Shown one piece after another: positions 3,001 to 29,646 of a stretch of 64,000 nt of DNA. How positions within the stretch are numbered: position 1 is the stretch's first letter; every line of letters begins with the position of its first letter. The translations under genes and the position numbers were made by a program. The stretch is taken from sequence record OR258281.1, one strand, 5' to 3'. The notes under the pieces are model-generated. The model had not been told where the DNA came from. It was given only the letters and a program-made list of their open reading frames with translations, and did not search any database.

Positions 3001-6000
3001 TTTCACTGTTAATTAACTGGAACTGAAGATGTTTCTTACCATTAATGTTTCCATAAGTACCAATTTTGAAAGCCCATTCTTCTAGTGCTTTATAGTTTTC
3101 AGTATTATAGCTCTTTGAAACACGTAATACTTTCTCAAATGACTGTTTAGTACCTTTTTCACGAATATAACCTTTATAGAAATCAACCTGTGAACTTTCT
3201 GAGGTGATCATTTCTTTAAGATAATCACGACTCTGGAAACCAATAAGGTGACGACCTAAATTAGCAAGAGTTGAATTATCAGTAGGGTTGTCATTGTCGT
3301 AATACTTGGTAAAATCATTAACTAACTTCTCAAAGTTAGGTAAGGTGCCACTTTCAAGAACCATAAAGCCAGGTGCTTCAAGACGACCATTCCATGAGCC
3401 AGTGATATATCCATAAAGCTGAAGCATTTCATGAATAGAACCATAAACTGGCTGATAAATGTAGTTGCCAAAGATGGTTTTATTATCAAAGATAATTGCA
3501 TGTTCGAATGAAACTAGGTTCAGACGAATTAATGCCATCTGTTTAGTACTATCATCATCAAGGCGAACACTGAAAACGTTACCAATACGAGAAGTATCGA
3601 TCTCAGAAGGACGAATACCTGTACCTGTGCTATCAAGTAGTGACCAAACACCACCAGTATATTGAGCAACAGAAAGAACTGTACCGAATTCTGAGCCAAA
3701 TTTAGCATTAGCTGTGCTTGGAGATAGAATTAAGTACTCACCGCTTGATTTAGTGCTGATAGCCCAATCAAGGTATGACTTAGCAATTTTACCCCAATCA
3801 TATACTTCACCGTTACTGTCAATGTCTTCGAAAATCCATCCTTCGTTAACAAGATACTGACCATAGCCCGTAATGAAGTTATAAACCTCCTGTGGGGTCT
3901 TCAGTAGTGTACCATAGTCGTAGGTACTATATGTACTCAAGAACTCGCTGTAATGCGTTACAGAGAGGTTTCCAGCACTTGCAGTACTACGTTTGCCGAT
4001 TTTGTTAGGATTCTGCACGTTGAACTTAGAATTAACAAGGTCAAAACCAGTTAATGAATAGCCGTTTCCGGTCCAAGTAACTTTCATTGAACTGAAAATA
4101 GCTTCTTTATAAACAGAACTTTTAACAAGTCCGATTTTTTGGTTCTGTTGCGAAACAACACCGAAAGAATCAGATTTGAATGTTAAATTATCAGCTTTAC
4201 TATAACCACCAAGACGATGACCGATATTAACGTTACTAGCACGTAGAATATCACCGTAGTTTTTAGTTACATTAATGTTTTGAGAGATTAGTTTATCGCT
4301 AATCCACATCTGGTAACCAAGAGTACGGATTGAATTCTCACTATGTACTAAAGTATTAGAACTAAAGTTAAGACGAGTATTACTTTCACCGTACTGGAAC
4401 TGAGAATCACCGTTTTTAACAGTTTTAAGGTTAGAACTTTTAGTATCATAGAAATATGATGCAAACTTAGCTGGTTTAGCACGTAATAGAGTTAGTGCTT
4501 TATCAAATGCATAAAGCGGGGTATTAGAATATGCGAATTCAATTTCACCCATATCACCAAACTTCCAAGGTTCTGCTAAATGGTTAAGAGCACCACTTAC
4601 CATACCTAAAGTACTTGGAGAAATTAACTCAACGGTCATAATTTCGTTACCGTTTGATGCATAATTACCAGTTTTCTTGATTACGAACGGAACAACACCG
4701 AAATGTTTATATTTGTCGTACTGGCCTTTACGTGCACCCTGTGAAATAGTACCAGTACTAACATCACCAGAAACACCGTTATAATCCCATAGTCCGTTAC
4801 TTACTAGATTGCCATTTTCATTAACGAATGATGCATCATATACGTTGATAACGTCTGTATCATTAACACCAATCTGTACCTGACGTACTTTATACTCTGT
4901 ATTGAACCAATCAGGACGTTGAGTGAAACCGAACATTTCCCATGGATGAGTATGTGGACGATATGTGCCATACATGTCATTAAAAATTGCACGCCATGAA
5001 CCTTTAGCCGGAATATCGGTAACATTACCATTAACAACGTAAGTAGTACCGGTAAAGTTCCATGTCATCCAGTTATTTTGGTCATAATTATGTGCAGTCG
5101 CATCAATTGAGTTTGATGCAATAAAGTTTGTATACCCACGTAGTGAAAGAGTAGTAAACTCTTCAGAACTGTATTCAGTACCAGTATAATAAGCACTTGG
5201 TTTAAGATCACTTTCATTTAGTACAGGAACATAATCGGCATCTTTAAAATCGGCATCGATACTTGTATAAATGCGATTTTCAAGTTCATAGATTACATCA
5301 TCCATTAAAGGAACGTTACTGTTATTAACAGCATATGCTTTACTTACAGCACCAGTATGATCTACGTTGTAACAACCTACAGAACTACCAACATGCATAT
5401 AAACAGCTTTCTGTGGTTTAAAAGTACCAAGAATTCCTAAGAACTGTGGAGTTGCAGGAATATAAGTAGTTAGTACTGAAGAGTTTGAACCCACTAAGTT
5501 AATAGCGAATGGGAAATCAGAACTCTTACCAATGTTTAGTTTAGACAGAATTTCATCAACCAGAATAGATGCAGTCTTATTAGTGAATGCATTAGGGTCT
5601 GCGTTGTATAGCTGAATCATAACATTGTTAAAGCGGTTTTTGAATCGGAAGTACTCATTCTGGCTATACATAATAGCATCAAATAGATTCAGATTTTCAT
5701 TTGCTGAAGTCAGCATTAGTGGAAGCAGTGAAGCTTCATTCTGAATGATCTGAGTACTTAGACTGTTGTCAACTAAACCTTTCTCAAGCCGTAATTCATA
5801 ATCATTGGTATCATTAATAGAACCACTGGTGATGTTCTTACGAATAATTTCCTGGAAATGAAGAGTATAAAGACCCGCATGAACGTAATCAATTTTACCA
5901 TTCATTGGGTTATTTTTCAGATTGTCAGGAATTTCGTAAGCACCTAATTCTTTGTTTGGTACTTCAGTTGCACTGTAAGTTCTGATGCTAATAATAGTAT

Positions 6001-22921: not shown

Positions 22922-22965
22922 ATGTAGTACTCAATACTATAACATAATAGTATTTAGAAAATACA

Positions 22966-22994
22966 TGAAACATTCGTGAAATGTGTTCTATACT
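22966..22994 (+). promoter_or_regulatory. Early/middle promoter TGAAAC-N17-TATACT
   Basis: tgaaac attcgtgaaatgtgttc tatact; followed by about 640 nt with no credible ORF. Confidence 0.85.
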
Positions 22995-22996
22995 AC

Positions 22997-23590
22997 ATGT
23001 ATAAACCTGATTGGCGTACCCGTTTAGTCGTGGATTGATGATAAGAGTTTCATCCTTCTTGGTACGATGTATAAAACCTGATCCTATCGAAAACGTAGAT
23101 GGCAGATGAGTTGTCCAAACAGAACGAAGTGCAAATGAGACCCGTGTATATTACTCCAAGCGAACGCAGAGGACACGGCAATGCGGCACTATAAAGAGCA
23201 AAGATAATGCAAGTAATGCTCCATAGATAGACATATAAGGATCGCACCTTACCAACATGCATAAGGGATTCTATTACTAAAATAGATTTAGCGACATATT
23301 TTTATAATATAAATGTGTCCTGAATATTAGTACTTAGAGAGCTAATACGATTAATCATACAGTCTGTATTAGTAGAGTAGTGATGAACTACGACCGTTGT
23401 TAGAATGGCGATAGGAAGAAACAGGACAACCCGCTTCCGCTTACGATGTACAATATAGTTACGTCTAAAATTCGCTGTATGATATGTACGACGATACCAG
23501 CGTCAAATTTATATTTCACTTCCCTCTTGCGGGGGATAGAAATGTACTCATAGAACCGCGTCAAGTAGTAGTTGCTGTATAAGCTTTGTT
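22997..23590 (+). ncRNA. Candidate large structured non-coding RNA (or very long structured leader)
   Basis: Promoter-driven, no + strand ORF, 42% G+C at 23041-23220 against AT-rich neighbours, more than 10 stems with G-U pairs favouring the + strand. Confidence 0.5.
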
Positions 23591-23641
23591 ATTATTAAGT
23601 TTATAAAGTAATTAATATTAAATGAATTGAATGAGAAATGA

Positions 23642-24187
23642 ATGAACGTAGTGAATTCATTACGAATGAAAATTCTGACTTGCTTTAGCAAGGCATCTAA
23701 AGAGACATTAAGAATGTTAGAAAAGAACTATGAATATTTTATAGAATTCAAATATAATTTCCTTAATCTACTTCAAGAAATGCATAATTGGAATCAATGG
23801 TATTCCGTATTAGATACTACCAATTCATATGATAATATCAGATTTTGCTTTGATATTAAAGCATTTAACTCTAAGTACTATATCGCTATTTTTAATGAAA
23901 CATATAGTGGTTTGTTTGTTAGAATGATTAAAACTATAGCTTACACTAATGAAGATTATCGAATAAACTTTCATTTTAGTAACTATGACAAACTCAAACA
24001 TATAACTATATCTTTGAATCATGAATATGATATAATCATTGACATTACTGCTAAAACCTATACATTAAGAACTGTTAGGACTCAAGTACAACAGGCATTA
24101 TATGAAAATAGTGATTTCATTTTTAATATGTCATTCATCTATCCATTACAAGAAGATTTAAAGTACATTAAAGAAAACTTTTTATGA
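23642..24187 (+). CDS. Hypothetical protein, 181 aa (paralog family with C-terminal FIFNMS..YP motif)
   Basis: ORF track; very AT-rich; C-terminus NSDFIFNMSFIYPLQEDLKYI resembles that of the next ORF. Confidence 0.75.
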   Translation: MNVVNSLRMKILTCFSKASKETLRMLEKNYEYFIEFKYNFLNLLQEMHNWNQWYSVLDTTNSYDNIRFCFDIKAFNSKYYIAIFNETYSGLFVRMIKTIAYTNEDYRINFHFSNYDKLKHITISLNHEYDIIIDITAKTYTLRTVRTQVQQALYENSDFIFNMSFIYPLQEDLKYIKENFL

Positions 24188-24645
24188 TTAATAAATTACC
24201 TAATGAAATATTAGAAGTTGTTAATTCGGTTCTTGATAATAAAAACTATTTTTCATCTAAGTATTGTGCTTCTATAGAAGCTGATGACTTTTATTTGAAC
24301 TACGAAACTTATGCAAGAGGATTACATATTAATGGTAAGATTATATCAAATTGTAAAGGTTTAACTAAACTGACTCTAGCGAAATTTAATAATTCATACA
24401 ATATATGTTTCTTCTTTAATATTAACGGAACATTTGAATCAGTACAACTTAGTACTGATGGCTCCGCAAGAAAAGTACCAGAACTATTTTATGATGTTAA
24501 ACACTACAGTATTGAATATCGTGGAGAAGAAGTACAATATGGTAATGAATTTATCTTCAATTTAAGTATTATTCAACCAGATATGGTTGATGATTTCGAA
24601 TACATATATTATCGAATTTTAGGCATAAAAAAAGACACTCAATGA
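24184..24645 (+). CDS. Hypothetical protein, 153 aa (same paralog family)
   Basis: ATGA overlap with the previous ORF; C-terminus GNEFIFNLSIIQPDMVDDFEYI. Confidence 0.75.
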   Translation: MINKLPNEILEVVNSVLDNKNYFSSKYCASIEADDFYLNYETYARGLHINGKIISNCKGLTKLTLAKFNNSYNICFFFNINGTFESVQLSTDGSARKVPELFYDVKHYSIEYRGEEVQYGNEFIFNLSIIQPDMVDDFEYIYYRILGIKKDTQ

Positions 24646-24656
24646 GTGCCTTATTT
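24627..24656. terminator. Bidirectional terminator between convergent genes
   Basis: aaaaaaagacactc-aat-gagtgccttattt hairpin. Confidence 0.65.
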
Positions 24657-24809
24657 CTGCTTCTCTCTCTTAATTTTTGCATTCCATACATTAACAAGAG
24701 TGTCGCGTTTCGTTACTGGAATGTTCAGTAGTAAATCGTAAGTCACATTTGGGACATTTATTACAATGTCCCATAAATTCTTTTCAATCTCTTCCTGATT
24801 AAGTACCAT
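24651..24809 (-). CDS. gp51: gp51-like baseplate/tail assembly chaperone C-terminal ORF (52 aa from ATG; frame open from 24866); not in ORF track
   Basis: MVLNQEEIEKNLWDIVINVPNVTYDLLLNIPVTKRDTLVNVWNAKIKREKQK; fills the gap between gp26 and the terminator; no clear SD, so probably reached by frameshift. Confidence 0.65.
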   Translation of the reverse strand: MVLNQEEIEKNLWDIVINVPNVTYDLLLNIPVTKRDTLVNVWNAKIKREKQK

Positions 24810-24826
24810 CGTACCCAAAAACTTCT

Positions 24827-25693
24827 TTACTTCTTCGTAGTCTTCCGAGAGAAGCTGTCCACGAAAAAACTGCTAGGGTCAAATTGCAGTCCTTCAATAG
24901 TCCACTGATGCTTACATTCAGAACATTCCACATCCAGATTATGATCCACGCCAAAACTATTCATTTTGTATGCTGCTTCAGTAATAACTTCAACCGTATT
25001 CTTATCCAGATTATTAGCCCATTCTTTGATATGTTCTTTATTATCCACTACTACATTATCAGGTAGTTCGATACGACTGATATAGGTGGTTAGAATATCG
25101 AACTGTAACTGTGCCATATTATCAAAAAAAGCACTGAAGAATTTTAGTTTTTCATCATCTTCTTCAATCTTGTCAGCAAACTGCATAGTCTTCTGCTGCT
25201 GGAATGTACGAATACTGAATTCAGTATGTTCTTTCCATGTGTGCGGTTTAAAGTATATTACTAAACCGTTATCCAGTGCAAGTACTGGTTCTTCCTGCAT
25301 CAAAGTTGCCTGTTCAAAGAGATAATTCAGGTCACGTTCAAACATACCTTCCTTTTCACATTTGGGACATTTTTCAATAATCTCATATGTTTCTTCTTTA
25401 GTAGCCAATTTAATACCAATCAGTAGTAATTCAACATCTGGTACAAATAGTTCATCTGCATTCTTAATTTCTTTAACACAGTTTTCAATAACAGTACTTA
25501 CTGCTTTACCATTCATCAGTGCATCAGGGTTGTTGAATAGTAATTCATCTCGTGCTGAACGTGCACAAATACCAATTTCGGTACTGGTATCTTCAATTAC
25601 GGTTTTAGAATAGGGTACTTTGCTGTTTGTTACTAATTTAGTGAACTTAATCGGTGTTTTAGTATACTGAGCCAAAGGATTCATATTACTCAT
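24827..25693 (-). CDS. gp26: Baseplate hub/tail assembly chaperone (T4 gp26-like), 288 aa
   Basis: NPL..Y...KL, ARDELLFNNPDALMNGKA, DVELLLIGIKLAT, CPKC and C-terminal CSEC..FDPSSFF; divergent from the tape-measure candidate. Confidence 0.85.
   Translation of the reverse strand: MSNMNPLAQYTKTPIKFTKLVTNSKVPYSKTVIEDTSTEIGICARSARDELLFNNPDALMNGKAVSTVIENCVKEIKNADELFVPDVELLLIGIKLATKEETYEIIEKCPKCEKEGMFERDLNYLFEQATLMQEEPVLALDNGLVIYFKPHTWKEHTEFSIRTFQQQKTMQFADKIEEDDEKLKFFSAFFDNMAQLQFDILTTYISRIELPDNVVVDNKEHIKEWANNLDKNTVEVITEAAYKMNSFGVDHNLDVECSECKHQWTIEGLQFDPSSFFVDSFSRKTTKK
24863..24869 (-). other. Putative -1 ribosomal frameshift slippery heptamer T TTT TTC
   Basis: Codons AGT TTT TTC (S-F276-F277); the -1 frame opens two codons after a TAG (24873-75) and runs 71 codons into the gp51-like ORF. 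Confidence 0.7.
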
Positions 25694-25707: not shown

Positions 25708-25715
25708 TATAAATA
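25708..25715 (+). promoter_or_regulatory. Late promoter TATAAATA for the tape measure-portal operon
   Basis: Perfect consensus 40 nt upstream of ATG 25755. Confidence 0.8.
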
Positions 25716-25729
25716 CTTCATAATAACTC

Positions 25730-25737
25730 TATTTATA
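25730..25737 (-). promoter_or_regulatory. Late promoter TATAAATA for gp26
   Basis: tatttata on + strand, 37 nt upstream of ATG 25693; face-to-face with the 25708 promoter. Confidence 0.8.
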
Positions 25738-25754
25738 AATTGGAGAATTGTATT

Positions 25755-27884
25755 ATGCAGACGGATGTTATTTTAGAACAGATTTTGGAACAAGCAAAAT
25801 TATCTAATGGCACGTTAGCACTAATAAAAGAACAACTTGTTAAAAATGCAGGTAATAATGGTTCTGGTTCTGGTCCAGGTGGTAATCCACCTTCTCCACC
25901 ACCTGGTGCTAACCGAAATCAAGGCCCAAGTATTGATTTCAAGAAAATATTCAAAGATTTTGGTAAATCATTTGCCCCACTAGCAGCAAGTTCAGCGGAT
26001 TCAAGTACCTTAATCAATTCAGTAGGACAAGCAGCCAGTTCTGCTGCTGATTCCTTACAATCCATACCAAACCCGGTAGCACAGGCCGCAGGAATGTTCC
26101 TGAGAGTCGTAAGTACTGGTTCTAAACTATATGATTATCTTGAAGGTCAGTTAAAGCTGTATCAGGATCTGAATAACGCAGGTCTATCACTACAGACAGG
26201 TATATTTGGCGTTAAATCGTCAGCGGCTGATGCACATCTAAGTTTAGATGGATTATCTAAAGTACTAATGTCAAACACCGACACATTTGCAGCAATGGAT
26301 GATGTGTATGGTGACGGAATACAGCACTTTGGTAACTTAGTAAATACCGTGACAATGGCACAGAAACAAATTGGTGCATACGGTTTATCTCAGCAGCAGA
26401 TAGCTAATATTACTGCTAAGAATTTTAAATTAGACAAGTTATATGGTAGTAACTCACAGATGCGTGATTTGCAGGAGCAACAATCATCTCAGAGTTACAT
26501 CAGAACATTACTTGATATGAGTAAAGTACTTGGTACGAGTGTTGATACTTTATTGAAAAAGAATGAAGCTTTCTCTGAAAGTTATGAAGGATTTGCTATT
26601 GATACAGTACTGGATAGGTTATTACCGCCGGACTTATCTAAGAAAACATCTAAAGAATTTGGCGTGTTCACTGCTGGTTTAGGTGAAGCTGGTGAGAACA
26701 TTCAGCATATTATGTCTGAATATTTGACTACTGGACGTTTACCTAAAGATGTTGGTCAGTGGGGCAGAAGTTTAATGCCATTCTTTGATAATATGTACAA
26801 AGCAATTAAATCAGGTAATTTTAATCCTAAAGACTTTGAAAAAGAACTTAAGAGATTAAGTAAAGATCCTTCTCAGCTTGCAGCAATGCAGGATGATATT
26901 CAAGCAGCACAGCAAACAAGTAATGCTGCCGGTGCAAAAATACTTACATCATTCCGTAATGTCAGTGTATTACTAAATCAGAATGCAGGTAAAACTGATG
27001 ATGCCTTTACTACATTGATGACCAGATTTGATAACTGGATGGGTGATAGTATTACTAAACCTATTCTAAAATTCTTTAGTGATACTGCTAATACAATTAG
27101 TGAAGGTATATTAAGTGTATATAATAGTACTGGTTCTAGTTGGGAAGTAGCACAGAGTTTATTCTTAGCTGGTATGGGTAAGTTATTTGATTGGATAACA
27201 TATATTCCTACAAAATTAGCAGGATTACTTATTGGTCAGGAAAATGCCGAAGGAATACAAACTGCGGTTAAATCCGTATTCACTAACTTAACTTCTGTGT
27301 TCCAGCGTGCAGGTAAAATTGTATGGGATATGTTCTTTGGCAGTGAAGAAGATTTAAAACGTGACGGTAAGATGATCCATGAAGCTATTAACAATATAGT
27401 GCAAGGAGTAAAAGATTGGTTTAATAAAATTAAGAATCTTATTAAAAATCTTTCCTTTACTGGAATAAAGGATTCGATTACCGATTGGGGTAAAGAGGCT
27501 AGTGATTCTGTTAGTAAGAAATGGGATGCATTTAAGAAAGGTTTCAAAGGTGATACTACTGAAACTCAAAAACCTGCATCACCTAAGACTCAAAAAACTA
27601 ACGGACCAACCAGTACTGAGAAAAAGGCTAAACCTGTTGCACCAGTTAAACCAGTTAAGGTTAAGCCAGAATATACTAACCCGGTTAAAGTTGATAAACC
27701 CGATGATAAAGATCAAGACCCAAATGCAAATGGTCCGGTACAACCAACACAGGCAGAATTGGATATTCAGAACATACTAAATAACCTTGCAAGCGTTGGA
27801 AATGCACAACTTGGTGCACTTAACAATGCGGTGAAAGCTCTTAATAATATTAATTCTAATACCCAACCGGTAAACAATGCATAA
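25755..27884 (+). CDS. Putative tape measure protein (gp29-like), about 709 aa
   Basis: Start refined to ATG 25755 behind GGAG; helical Ala/Gly/Gln-rich sequence with Trp/Phe-periodic segments; adjacent to the gp26/gp51 chaperone. Confidence 0.6.
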   Translation: MQTDVILEQILEQAKLSNGTLALIKEQLVKNAGNNGSGSGPGGNPPSPPPGANRNQGPSIDFKKIFKDFGKSFAPLAASSADSSTLINSVGQAASSAADSLQSIPNPVAQAAGMFLRVVSTGSKLYDYLEGQLKLYQDLNNAGLSLQTGIFGVKSSAADAHLSLDGLSKVLMSNTDTFAAMDDVYGDGIQHFGNLVNTVTMAQKQIGAYGLSQQQIANITAKNFKLDKLYGSNSQMRDLQEQQSSQSYIRTLLDMSKVLGTSVDTLLKKNEAFSESYEGFAIDTVLDRLLPPDLSKKTSKEFGVFTAGLGEAGENIQHIMSEYLTTGRLPKDVGQWGRSLMPFFDNMYKAIKSGNFNPKDFEKELKRLSKDPSQLAAMQDDIQAAQQTSNAAGAKILTSFRNVSVLLNQNAGKTDDAFTTLMTRFDNWMGDSITKPILKFFSDTANTISEGILSVYNSTGSSWEVAQSLFLAGMGKLFDWITYIPTKLAGLLIGQENAEGIQTAVKSVFTNLTSVFQRAGKIVWDMFFGSEEDLKRDGKMIHEAINNIVQGVKDWFNKIKNLIKNLSFTGIKDSITDWGKEASDSVSKKWDAFKKGFKGDTTETQKPASPKTQKTNGPTSTEKKAKPVAPVKPVKVKPEYTNPVKVDKPDDKDQDPNANGPVQPTQAELDIQNILNNLASVGNAQLGALNNAVKALNNINSNTQPVNNA

Positions 27885-27897
27885 CATGGAGTGTTAA

Positions 27898-29646
27898 ATG
27901 AGTAGTTGGAAACGACATATGACTATGAGCCGTTCCAAAATCACCACAAATAAAAAAGGTGACAAGGAAGACGTATTCGGAACGGGTAGTAGTAAAAATT
28001 ATTCATCATACCTTCCTGCTGTTTATACAGGTCTTTCAAATCGTACTGACCGTTATCGTCAGTACGATCAAATGGATCAAGATCCAGAAATTAGTACAGC
28101 ACTAGATATTCTAACTGATTTCTGTACACAAAACACAGAAGACTATGATATACCATTTCAATTAAAGTATAAAGATGACATGGGTGATACTGAAGTTATC
28201 ACACTGGAATCTATGCTTGATTCATGGTGTACTTTAAACGATATTAAAATACGGATTTATAATTTTTTCCGTTCTTATATTAAGTACGGAGATATTTTCT
28301 TTGTACGTGATCCAGAAACCTACGAGCTACTTTGGATAGACCCAGCTAACGTAGATAAAGTAACAGTTAATGAAAGTACTGGTAAAATTCCTGTAATTTA
28401 TTATATGCGTGATATCTCTTTAAACGTAAGAGACAAAGTACTGAGTAACGTTAACGTTGGAATGGATCGTGGTTTATATGCAGGACAAGTACCCAACAGT
28501 ATGAGTGGTGGTGGAATGCAGTATGGTTCAATGGGCGGTGGTGGTTCATCTCCTAGTGCTGATACTTCTAATCCATATAGCACTTCTGGTCAGCTAGATG
28601 TTATTCCAGTAGCAGCAGAACACGTAGTACATATTTCACTAAACCCCGGAACAGATGCATTCTGGCCTTTTGGAACTAGTATTTTAGAAACCGTGTTCAA
28701 AACATATAAACAGAAAGAATTACTTGAAGATAGTATTATTATCTATCGTGTACAACGTGCACCAGAACGCCGTGTGTTTAAGATTGATGTTGGTGATATG
28801 CCAGCACACCAAGCACTATCATATGTTGAACGTATGAAAAATGAAATCCATCAACGCCGTATTCCATCTAATAAAGGTGGTAGTACTTCATTAATGGATG
28901 CAGCTTACAACCCATTAAGTATGTTAGAAGATTATTTCTTCCCACAGACTGCTGATGGTCGTGGCTCCAGTGTAGAAACATTACCGGGTGGTGAAAACTT
29001 AGGACAGATTGATGACTTACGTTGGTTTAATAATAAACTAATTCGTGGATTAAAAATCCCAAGTTCATATCTTCCATTTGGTCCAGAAGATGGTGGTACT
29101 TTATTTGGTGATGGTGGAGTAGGCAAAGCACTTATTCAGGAACATCGCTTTAATAAAGCATGTATGCGTTGGCAGACACTATTCTCTAAAGTAATTGACC
29201 AAGAGTTTAAACGTTATTTGATTGCAAATGGTTTAAATATTCCAGCAGAATCTTTTGAAGTGAACTTTATCCAGCCTATGAACTTTGCAGCTTATCGTAA
29301 AGCAGAATATGACCAGACTATGATTAGTACCTATGCAGCACTAAACGAATTACCGTATGTTGCTAAACAAACCATTCTTAAACGTATGGGATGGACACAG
29401 GAAGAAATCGTAGAGAACGAACGTTTACTACTTCAAGAGAATCCGAAACGTGCCAATAAAAACTCTGGCGGTGCAGATGATCAAGCAGGTTTACAATCTG
29501 TAGGAATTTCCGCTCCGAATGAACCTGATATGGATTTAGGTGCAAACCCTGAAGATACCGAAGGATTAGGTGCTTCTGAAGGTGGTGCCTCTCCAATTCC
29601 AGGTGGTGCAGGTTTAGACCCTAATTCAGTTGGAGGCTCTTTCTAA
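27898..29646 (+). CDS. gp20: Portal protein (T4 gp20-like), 582 aa
   Basis: LLEDSIIIYRVQRAPERRVFKIDVG, NPLSMLEDYFFP...GRGSSVETLPGGENLGQIDD..WF..KL..GLKIPSSYL. Confidence 0.96.
   Translation: MSSWKRHMTMSRSKITTNKKGDKEDVFGTGSSKNYSSYLPAVYTGLSNRTDRYRQYDQMDQDPEISTALDILTDFCTQNTEDYDIPFQLKYKDDMGDTEVITLESMLDSWCTLNDIKIRIYNFFRSYIKYGDIFFVRDPETYELLWIDPANVDKVTVNESTGKIPVIYYMRDISLNVRDKVLSNVNVGMDRGLYAGQVPNSMSGGGMQYGSMGGGGSSPSADTSNPYSTSGQLDVIPVAAEHVVHISLNPGTDAFWPFGTSILETVFKTYKQKELLEDSIIIYRVQRAPERRVFKIDVGDMPAHQALSYVERMKNEIHQRRIPSNKGGSTSLMDAAYNPLSMLEDYFFPQTADGRGSSVETLPGGENLGQIDDLRWFNNKLIRGLKIPSSYLPFGPEDGGTLFGDGGVGKALIQEHRFNKACMRWQTLFSKVIDQEFKRYLIANGLNIPAESFEVNFIQPMNFAAYRKAEYDQTMISTYAALNELPYVAKQTILKRMGWTQEEIVENERLLLQENPKRANKNSGGADDQAGLQSVGISAPNEPDMDLGANPEDTEGLGASEGGASPIPGGAGLDPNSVGGSF

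What the first reader, a model, noticed from the sequence alone, without database searches (positions are those of the whole stretch)
24651..25693. Probable -1 programmed frameshift fusing gp26 to a hidden gp51-like ORF (lambda G/GT-style chaperone in a T4-related jumbo phage)
Seen in the sequence: gp26 reads AGT TTT TTC (S-F276-F277), giving the X XXY YYZ heptamer T TTT TTC at 24863-24869 on the minus strand. The -1 frame opens only two codons earlier (TAG at 24873-75) and runs 71 codons (FRGQLLSEDYEEVKKFLGTMVLNQEEIEKNLWDIV...KREKQK*) to 24651. The internal ATG at 24809 has no clear SD, and the 0-frame tail after FF is a short junk-like VDSFSRKTTKK. The predicted products are 288 aa and 347 aa, and the gene lies next to the tape-measure candidate. 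Established knowledge: G/GT frameshifts are conserved in long-tailed phage tail chaperones, whereas T4 gp26 and gp51 are treated as separate genes. Inference: gp26/gp51 is the G/GT system and is made here by recoding.
Basis: partly seen in the sequence, partly recalled or inferred. Interest (0 to 1): 0.85.

Follow-up and report, generated by a model that had tools for sequence, protein, structure and literature searches.

The report
Conserved frameshift in phage gp26 chaperone
The gp26 tail/baseplate-hub assembly gene of Xanthomonas jumbo phage XaC1 almost certainly makes a second, longer protein by a -1 ribosomal slip on T_TTT_TTC, but this two-product arrangement was already described for T4-like phages in 2022, so it is a well-supported, unannotated example of a known kind.

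Summary
The window is Xanthomonas phage XaC1. Its 288-aa gp26 homologue (PF12322) carries T_TTT_TTC in the X_XXY_YYZ register at its C-terminal Phe-Phe. The 0 frame stops 11 codons later and the -1 frame runs 70 further codons to a terminator.

One such heptamer means little: the window has four. Comparison decides it. The heptamer, a 0-frame stop 0-11 codons on, and a homologous 58-84-codon -1 ORF are present in 51 of 54 related loci, down to about 15-25% gp26 identity. The codon before Phe-Phe always ends in T although its amino acid varies. The background for internal x-Phe-Phe sites is 12%. ATG positions in the -1 ORF are not conserved, and PA5oct has none.

The clearest exceptions are T-even phages. 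They lack the site and carry a separate gp51, which is a gp26-like domain joined in one frame to a tail homologous to the -1 extension.

It matches Vladimirov, Gautam and Davidson (Virology 2022), which I know only through citing papers. The 582-aa neighbour is the portal. The 714-aa neighbour is only weakly tape-measure-like. Verdict: new member of a known kind.

The parts
24827..25693 (-). gp26-like gene, 0 frame, 288 aa (annotated XaC1_327 'baseplate hub subunit'); the short product
   Evidence: PF12322 T4_baseplate E 6e-20, with the profile ending at residue 277, the second Phe of the heptamer. phrog_150 E 1.4e-26. The AF2 model has pLDDT 87 and pTM 0.85, with residues 278-288 below pLDDT 50. 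BFVD fold matches to gp26-type baseplate hub proteins reach E 1e-23. Four Cys (109, 112, 257, 260) are invariant.
24863..24869 (-). Slippery heptamer T_TTT_TTC in X_XXY_YYZ register (codons 276-277 plus the last base of codon 275)
   Evidence: Read directly. T_TTT_TTY/G sits at the homologous Phe-Phe in 51 of 54 related loci. The preceding codon is always NNT although it encodes S, H, N, R, T, D, Y, A or V.
24651..24869 (-). -1-frame coding segment read after the slip (72 codons counted from TTT TTT, plus the stop); the C-terminal extension of the long product
   Evidence: Translation. phrog_18291 E 8e-14. tblastn matches cover it from its first residues in 74 phage records. Homologous -1 ORFs of 58-84 codons occur in all loci that have the heptamer (alignments A1 and A5). 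hhalign to the T2 gp51 C-terminus gives E 7e-4.
24829..24855 (-). Predicted hairpin starting 7 nt after the heptamer; possible frameshift stimulator
   Evidence: MFE -9.4 kcal/mol, at the 12th percentile of same-length windows in the locus. Across 34 loci the downstream 50 nt is more structured than background: median percentile 0.17, Fisher p 2e-5, with the loci not independent. The helix is possible in 86% of cells in the RaK2-like alignment but shows no covariation.
24651..24809 (-). Annotated small ORF XaC1_326 (52 aa from ATG 24809); here read as the 3' part of the -1 segment, not a separate gene
   Evidence: Annotation. Weak SD, -3.0 kcal/mol. The nearest non-identical relatives have no Met at this position and place their first Met elsewhere.
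24632..24652 (-). Terminator-like hairpin followed by a T run, directly after the -1 ORF stop
   Evidence: 9-pair stem, 3-nt loop, T7 tail. No minus-strand (gene-strand) terminator-like site was reported between the 0-frame stop and the -1 ORF; a plus-strand one lies at 24750-24773.
25730..25737 (-). TATAAATA 8-mer 37 nt upstream of the gp26 ATG; possible T4-type late promoter
   Evidence: A second copy on the + strand at 25708-25715 faces the 714-aa gene. There is none in front of the small ORF. That this 8-mer is the T4 late-promoter consensus is my own knowledge, and the motif is not enriched in the window overall (7 found, 10 expected).
25740..27884 (+). Divergent 714-aa virion structural protein gene (XaC1_328; the record's annotated start corresponds by my coordinate conversion to window 25755); candidate tape measure, not shown
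   Evidence: phrog_14121 E 1e-108, and a weak phrog_3336 tape-measure hit at E 0.0028. Syntenic next to gp26 throughout the RaK2-like clade. The RaK2 homologue's record note reads 'similar to ... tail tape measure protein'. No BLASTP similarity to T2 gp29 and no PDB or NCBIfam hit.

Best explanation
gp26 of XaC1 is the tail/baseplate-hub assembly chaperone of the T4 superfamily, and it is decoded in two ways. Most ribosomes read the 0 frame and stop 11 codons after the C-terminal Phe-Phe, giving the 288-aa short form. A minority slip back one base on T_TTT_TTC, with the P- and A-site tRNAs re-pairing on TTT TTT. They then read 70 more codons in the -1 frame, giving a ~347-aa long form that shares the first 277 residues and gains a small, probably helical, C-terminal domain. 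The long form is the functional equivalent of T-even gp51, and the short form of T-even gp26. By analogy with lambda G/GT, the shared body would hold the tape measure or hub protein and the extension would recruit the tube or hub partner. Shown here: the anatomy, its deep conservation, the homology of the extension to the gp51 tail, and the absence of a conserved start. Inferred: that the slip is ribosomal, its efficiency, the hairpin's role, and the chaperone mechanism.
For: (1) The heptamer is in register at the homologous Phe-Phe in 51 of 54 loci. These span RaK2-like, PA5oct-like, Atu_ph07/Phosso, XacN1/CM1, SCTP-2 and RsoM2USA jumbo phages, cyanophages, non-T-even Straboviridae, Pootjesviridae and metagenomic contigs, with gp26 identity down to about 15-25%. 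(2) The constraint is at nucleotide level. The preceding codon is always NNT although its amino acid varies, and the first Phe is always TTT. Internal x-Phe-Phe sites in the same loci show this only 8 times in 69. (3) The 0 frame always stops 0-11 codons later, at variable positions. That tail is disordered in the AF2 model. (4) The -1 frame is open from the heptamer for 58-84 codons in every such locus and is closed 1-13 codons upstream in the 20 loci where this was measured. (5) The residues right after the slip are as conserved as the rest. In 26 jumbo-lineage sequences, position 3 is Arg in 19, position 6 is Leu/Ile in 25, position 16 is Ile/Val in 23, and position 59 is Arg in 24. (6) The first Met varies from position 3 to 58 and PA5oct has none. 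RaK2 and PA5oct records annotate no small ORF. (7) T2 and CHI14 lack the heptamer and the -1 ORF. They carry gp51, which is PF12322 over residues 1-201 plus a tail. phrog_634 covers both that tail and the -1 extensions of S-BM1, D486 and AS-zj, with E 4e-31 to 3.5e-12. (8) XaC1 has a single gp26-family gene. (9) All 64 homologues in the 5.8-billion-protein set are 278-306 aa. (10) A hairpin starts 7 nt downstream, a terminator follows the -1 stop, and no promoter-like 8-mer precedes the small ORF. (11) Citing papers report the same model for T4-like phages.
Against: There is no direct protein or ribosome evidence for XaC1 or any relative in what I could read. The hairpin has no covariation support, and in XaC1 it is only at the 12th percentile. 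The short 0/-1 overlap does not show which frame is under selection: identity is 0.55 against 0.62, with no codon-position bias. Several relatives have an ATG overlapping the 0-frame stop, so some independent translation by coupling is possible there. ATG 24809 has a weak but non-zero SD. The link from the XaC1-clade extension to the gp51 tail rests on modest profile scores, E 3e-4 to 7e-4 with probability 26-40%. No sequence or fold similarity to lambda-type chaperones was found. [quoted passage not shown]
Confidence: 0.8

Rival explanations
1. The same two products arise by transcriptional slippage. The RNA polymerase adds one U in the T run, so a fraction of mRNAs carry the fused frame and ribosomes read them normally.
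For: The signal is a homopolymer. It is T6 in most loci, T7 in CM1, XacN1, L005 and L037, and T9 in RsoM2USA. [quoted passage not shown]
Against: The run always starts at codon position 3, giving the X_XXY_YYZ register. The equally long codon-aligned TTT TTT preceded by a non-T base is never seen in about 45 distinct loci. RHph_I9 keeps the register with T_TTT_TTG. Runs of six are short for efficient polymerase slippage (my own knowledge). A downstream hairpin at 6-8 nt fits ribosomal pausing.
Confidence: 0.1
2. The small ORF is a separate gene, translated on its own from ATG 24809 or by termination-reinitiation. The heptamer is only the coding of a conserved Phe-Phe, and no fusion protein is made.
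For: GenBank records annotate it as a separate gene, often with TAATG or TGATG overlap with the gp26 stop. ATG 24809 has a weak SD-like GGG. Vibrio phage K447 lacks the heptamer and has an ATG overlapping the stop.
Against: This does not explain the invariant NNT before Phe-Phe or TTT for the first Phe, against a 12% background. It does not explain conservation of the -1 peptide upstream of every ATG. It does not explain lineages whose first ATG lies 30-58 codons in, or PA5oct, which has none. T-even gp51 carries the same junction in one continuous frame.
Confidence: 0.07
3. The frame break is a sequencing or assembly indel in the T run, or a recent inactivating mutation of a longer gene.
For: Homopolymer runs are error-prone. 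That is the only support.
Against: The same frame arrangement occurs in 51 independently sequenced loci and in all 64 database homologues, which are 278-306 aa. Three independent metagenome contigs encode a 98%-identical gp26 of the same length, and the one examined (L051) shows the same T run and junction.
Confidence: 0.01

Closest known systems
[quoted passage not shown]
   Same: Same protein family (PF12322). Same idea of a short form and a long form that shares its N-terminus. Same poly-T -1 signal at the end of the short-form gene. T-even phages replace recoding by two genes, gp26 as the short form and gp51 as the fused long form. My reproduce this independently.
   Different: I could not read the paper, so I do not know whether RaK2-like and other jumbo phages were covered. 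None of the GenBank records I fetched annotates a joined CDS. In XaC1 the gene is divergent from the candidate tape-measure gene rather than upstream of it.
Lambda G/GT and the conserved tail-chaperone frameshift of long-tailed phages (Xu, Hendrix, Duda, Mol Cell 2004, as cited in PMC10885494)
   Same: [quoted passage not shown] The downstream ORF has no conserved start. Two products share an N-terminus. Conservation is by position rather than by sequence.
   Different: No sequence or fold similarity was detected. gp26 is 208-300 aa with a four-Cys motif, larger than typical chaperones of this kind (size comparison from my own knowledge). The heptamer is all-T. The tube - chaperone - tape measure gene order is seen in some T4-like relatives but not in XaC1.
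Tail chaperone -1 frameshift of Pakpunavirus/Vandenendeviridae and Andersonviridae with an invariant GTTTTT motif (PMC12846349)
   Same: A T-rich slippery site at the 3' end of the short-form gene. The downstream ORF is routinely mis-annotated as a hypothetical protein. The argument rests on an uninterrupted -1 frame across divergent genomes.
   Different: A different protein family and different phage families. The motif there is GTTTTT, whereas here it is a full T_TTT_TTY heptamer.

Membership tests
T4 gp26 family (Pfam PF12322 T4_baseplate / phrog_150 baseplate hub) | Profile match above the curated threshold over most of the protein | tested here: met
   72.3 bits against a cut-off of 24.5, residues 54-277. 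phrog_150 E 1.4e-26.
T4 gp26 family (Pfam PF12322 T4_baseplate / phrog_150 baseplate hub) | Two conserved Cys pairs and the same fold as other gp26-type proteins | tested here: met
   C109, C112, C257 and C260 are invariant in 41 sequences. The AF2 model (pLDDT 87) matches BFVD gp26/baseplate hub models with E 1e-23 to 1e-7 and TM up to 0.83. No solved structure exists to compare with.
Frameshifted tail assembly chaperone (short form / long form, lambda G/GT logic) | [quoted passage not shown] | tested here: met
   T_TTT_TTC at 24863-24869. Present in 51 of 54 loci, against an 11.6% background.
Frameshifted tail assembly chaperone (short form / long form, lambda G/GT logic) | The downstream -1 ORF is open from the slip site, conserved, and has no conserved initiation codon | tested here: met
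   58-84 codons open in all such loci. First Met at position 3-58 or absent. Column shares..
Frameshifted tail assembly chaperone (short form / long form, lambda G/GT logic) | The gene lies between the tail tube gene and the tape measure gene | tested here: inconclusive
   In Vibrio D486, Pseudomonas Milchi and Rhizobium RHph_I9, gp26 follows a tube or tube-initiator gene. In D486 and Milchi a large ORF follows it directly; in RHph_I9 a 141-aa ORF comes first. In XaC1 it is back-to-back with a 714-aa virion protein whose tape-measure similarity is weak.
Frameshifted tail assembly chaperone (short form / long form, lambda G/GT logic) | Sequence or fold similarity to characterised chaperones of the lambda gpG type | tested here: not met
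   No Pfam, NCBIfam or PDB sequence hit. The best Foldseek PDB E-value is 1.5. The claim is therefore 'works like', not membership of the gpG family.
Frameshifted tail assembly chaperone (short form / long form, lambda G/GT logic) | Two protein products observed, with the long one in the minority | not testable with these tools
   I found no proteomic or ribosome-profiling data for this locus. The XaC1 paper mentions no frameshift.
T4 gp51 (baseplate hub assembly catalyst, phrog_634) | The C-terminal tail of gp51 is homologous to the -1 extension | tested here: inconclusive
   This is strong for T4-like relatives: phrog_634 hits T2 gp51 residues 147-246 and the extensions of S-BM1, D486 and AS-zj, with E 4e-31 to 3.5e-12. 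For the XaC1 clade it is indirect: phrog_18291 is the hit rather than phrog_634, and hhalign gives E 7e-4 and 3e-4 at probability 26-40%, with positional equivalence in alignments A1 and A6.
T4 gp51 (baseplate hub assembly catalyst, phrog_634) | A single continuous ORF of gp26-like domain plus tail | tested here: not met
   In XaC1 the two parts are in different frames. No homologue in this clade among the 64 database proteins is longer than 306 aa.

The most novel reading that the evidence does not exclude
The all-T recoding site at the gp26 Phe-Phe may be far older and wider than described. It is shared by RaK2-like, PA5oct-like, Atu_ph07/Phosso, XacN1-like and SCTP-2-like jumbo phages, cyanophages, Pootjesviridae and uncultured lineages. 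The T-even two-gene arrangement would then be a late derived exception. That would make this one of the most deeply conserved recoding sites in tailed phages, and it is missing from every GenBank record I fetched. A lesser variant is that the shift is transcriptional rather than ribosomal.
Probability: 0.4. Interest if true: 0.45.

Novelty: new member of a known kind. Interest (0 to 1): 0.33.

Why it matters
It corrects the annotation of XaC1 and of dozens of related jumbo-phage genomes. The small 'hypothetical protein' after the 'baseplate hub subunit' is most likely the C-terminal domain of a second gp26 isoform, and 'baseplate hub subunit' is better read as an assembly chaperone. It also gives an independent comparative confirmation, across very divergent phages, of the gp26/gp51 chaperone model for T4-like tails. 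It shows where T-even phages departed from the ancestral recoding solution. It does not open a new kind of biology.

Tried and rejected
**Checks that were negative or inconclusive**
- RNAalifold on 11 RaK2-like sequences paired the U run itself with a purine stretch. Its energy was -0.2 kcal/mol with no covariation, so I rejected it.
- The hairpin I specified is possible in 86% of cells but shows no compensatory changes.
- A frame-of-selection test on the 33-nt overlap was inconclusive.
- Rfam found nothing in the window and there are no tRNAs.
- NCBIfam gave no hits. PDB sequence and fold searches found no relative of gp26.
- The 714-aa protein has no PDB hit and no meaningful BLASTP similarity to T2 gp29.
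- A single-sequence AF2 model of the extension is low confidence: pLDDT 60, four helices.

**Searches that needed a second attempt**
- The search for related loci with the single protein found only two loci. The RaK2-like alignment worked.

**Literature**
- The Vladimirov 2022 paper is not held.
- Searches for gp26 or baseplate hub together with frameshift found nothing relevant.

**Rejected explanations**
- Sequencing error, pseudogene, and the 582-aa ORF as a tape measure (it is the portal).

- The 9-nt anti-Shine-Dalgarno string in the script was typed from my own knowledge.
- The 8-mer searched was read from the window, but its meaning as a late promoter is from memory.
- Once I wrote an eight-letter string that straddled the junction of one relative. 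It was not saved or used.
- This report gives column shares instead.
Full report
**Origin and anatomy**

The window is Xanthomonas phage XaC1 (OR258281.1), a 349-kb myovirus of X. vesicatoria, at 100% identity. On the minus strand, ORF 25693..24827 encodes a 288-aa protein annotated 'baseplate hub subunit'. It matches PF12322 (T4_baseplate, E 6e-20) and phrog_150. The Pfam profile ends exactly at residue 277. Codons 275-277 are AGT TTT TTC, which gives T_TTT_TTC at 24869..24863 in the X_XXY_YYZ register.

The 0 frame stops 11 codons later. The -1 frame is closed by TAG at 24875..24873 and then open to 24651. GenBank annotates only its last 52 codons, from ATG 24809, as hypothetical protein XaC1_326. 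Its two product lengths, 288 and 347 aa, are also right.

**Is it more than chance?**

On its own it is not. ORFs of at least 100 aa in the window contain four in-register T_TTT_TTY sites. I therefore collected relatives:
- 26 loci from annotated phage records;
- 27 loci from IMG/VR that could be scored;
- contigs that encode close database homologues.

54 loci were scored in all, about 48 of them distinct. 51 have T_TTT_TTC at the homologous C-terminal Phe-Phe, or T_TTT_TTT in seven loci and T_TTT_TTG in RHph_I9. In each of these the 0 frame stops 0-11 codons later. A -1 ORF of 58-84 codons starts at the heptamer. Where measured (20 loci), that frame is closed 1-13 codons upstream.

The set includes:
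- RaK2, 121Q, CBB, GAP32 and BF;
- Vibrio 2.275.O;
- PA5oct;
- Phosso and Atu_ph07;
- SCTP-2 and RsoM2USA;
- XacN1 and CM1;
- the cyanophages S-BM1, S-CRM01 and P-HM1;
- Aeromonas AS-zj, Vibrio D486, Stenotrophomonas Yut2, Pseudomonas Milchi and Rhizobium RHph_I9.

gp26 identity to XaC1 falls to about 15-25%.

The codon before Phe-Phe is always NNT, although it encodes nine different amino acids, and the first Phe is always TTT. Among 69 internal x-Phe-Phe sites in long ORFs of the same loci, only 8 (11.6%) are encoded this way. This is a constraint on the nucleotides, not on the protein.

**Is the -1 ORF an independent gene?**

The evidence says no.
- In 26 jumbo-lineage sequences the residues directly after the slip are as conserved as the distal motif. 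Position 3 is Arg in 19. Position 6 is Leu/Ile in 25. Position 7 is Leu in 18. Position 16 is Ile/Val in 23. Position 47 is Tyr in 20. Position 59 is Arg in 24.
- The first Met lies anywhere from position 3 to 58 and is absent in PA5oct. RaK2 and PA5oct records annotate no small ORF.
- In the closest non-identical relatives of XaC1 (69-71% gp26 identity), Met is at position 14, where XaC1 has Lys. They have no Met where XaC1 has ATG 24809.
- The SD before 24809 is weak, at -3.0 kcal/mol. That is weaker than about 80% of long-ORF starts, though above random ATGs.
- No annotated record carries a joined CDS.
- All 64 homologues found among 5.8 billion proteins are 278-306 aa. The frame break is therefore universal in this clade and is not an error.

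**The T-even exceptions explain the system**

T2 and CHI14 (Tevenvirinae) encode Phe-Phe as TTC TTT. Their gp26 ends three residues later, gp25 follows at once, and the -1 frame is closed. They carry a separate, divergently transcribed 249-250-aa gp51.

T2 gp51 matches PF12322 over residues 1-201 at E 4e-55, so it is a gp26 paralogue with a ~48-residue tail. phrog_634 ('baseplate hub assembly catalyst') matches T2 gp51 residues 147-246. It also matches, at profile positions 56-119, the -1 extensions of S-BM1 (E 4e-31), D486 (1e-21) and AS-zj (3.5e-12). In alignment A6 the gp51 segment that follows its gp26-like domain lines up with the start of those extensions. Cyanophage records already call the tail of this ORF 'gp51'.

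For the XaC1 clade the link is weaker. The family hit is phrog_18291, of unknown function. hhalign to the gp51 C-terminus gives E 7e-4, and to the T4-like extension profile E 3e-4, at probabilities of 26-40%. Position and a shared distal motif agree with the link. XaC1 has only one gp26-family gene, so a long form can arise only by recoding.

Vibrio phage K447 is the third exception. It has no heptamer, and an ATG overlaps the stop. I did not follow it up.

**Mechanism**

The constant register favours tandem tRNA slippage over polymerase slippage. The codon-aligned T6 alternative is never seen, and RHph_I9 keeps the register with G at the last position. The longer T7-T9 runs in some lineages keep the polymerase rival alive.

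In XaC1 a hairpin of -9.4 kcal/mol starts 7 nt after the heptamer, at 24855..24829. Across 34 loci the 50 nt downstream are more structured than same-length windows of their loci. The median percentile is 0.17, and 20 of 34 fall below 0.25. Fisher's p is 2e-5, but the loci are related. No single helix is conserved by covariation, so the stimulator is plausible but not shown.

A terminator-like hairpin follows the -1 stop directly. The only TATAAATA on this strand in the region lies 37 nt upstream of the gp26 start. A second copy faces the 714-aa gene.

The AF2 model of the 0-frame product is confident (pLDDT 87, pTM 0.85), except for residues 278-288, the 0-frame tail. That fits a tail without function. 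The extension alone folds as four helices at low confidence.

**Context**

The 582-aa ORF at 27898-29646 is the portal (PF07230, E 9e-112). The 714-aa divergent neighbour is a conserved virion protein of the RaK2-like clade. It has one weak tape-measure hit and a record note to that effect for RaK2. It has no similarity to T2 gp29. At 714 residues against a measured tail of 133 nm (PMC11273794), the size is compatible with a tape measure, but nothing more can be said. In D486 and Milchi, gp26 and its extension sit between a tube-type gene and a large ORF. RHph_I9 is similar, but a 141-aa ORF lies between the extension and the large ORF.

**Prior knowledge**

PMC10885494 and PMC12846349 cite Vladimirov, Gautam and Davidson (Virology 2022) for three points. 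[quoted passage not shown] It reported poly-T -1 signals in their short-form genes. It reported that some T4-like phages carry one short gene and one fused long gene instead of frameshifting. I could not read the paper. The XaC1 description does not mention a frameshift.

**Verdict**

The mechanism is most likely a -1 ribosomal frameshift (0.8). The finding is a new, unannotated member of a known kind, and its interest is moderate to low.

A 9-nt anti-SD string was typed from my own knowledge. I recalled generic slippery motifs in my reasoning. Once, in reasoning only, I wrote an eight-letter string across the junction of a relative.

Noticed in passing
window 27898-29646 (+): The 582-aa ORF next to the 714-aa gene is the T4-type portal protein (PF07230 E 9e-112, phrog_213), not a tape measure.
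   Followed up: yes
L020 (Vibrio phage K447, OZ196071.1) 2040-2300: This gp26 ends without a slippery heptamer (Leu-Phe encoded CTT TTC). The homologous downstream ORF has an ATG overlapping the stop (TAATG). It may have switched from recoding to coupled initiation. I did not check whether it has a second gp26 paralogue.
   Followed up: no
L004 (IMGVR_UViG_3300009354_000014) 3250-3271: A second in-register X_XXY_YYZ heptamer (T_TTA_AAC) lies 15 nt upstream of the conserved T_TTT_TTC, and the -1 frame is already open there.
   Followed up: no
Yersinia phage fHe-Yen9-03/-04 records; JGI names for P0041 and P0051: gp26 homologues are misnamed 'Lead, cadmium, zinc and mercury transporting ATPase' and 'ribosomal protein S27E'. 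The likely cause is the four-Cys motif, which is invariant (C109, C112, C257, C260 in XaC1 numbering).
   Followed up: partly
window about 22922-23713: About 790 bp carry no annotated gene between XaC1_324 and the endonuclease VII gene. BF, XbC2 and 121Q have a similar ~800-bp unannotated gap between the small ORF and endonuclease VII; in RaK2 the corresponding gap is only ~170 bp by my count. There is no Rfam family and no tRNA.
   Followed up: partly
window 25708-25737: Two copies of TATAAATA sit back to back, one on each strand, in the ~60-bp gap between gp26 and the 714-aa gene. This suggests a divergent late promoter pair. The motif is not enriched in the window overall.
   Followed up: partly
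Pectobacterium phage CBB record (KU574722.1 / NC_041878.1): The gp26 homologue is annotated 'structural protein'. If that rests on virion mass spectrometry, it would sit oddly with a pure chaperone role. I did not check the paper.
   Followed up: no
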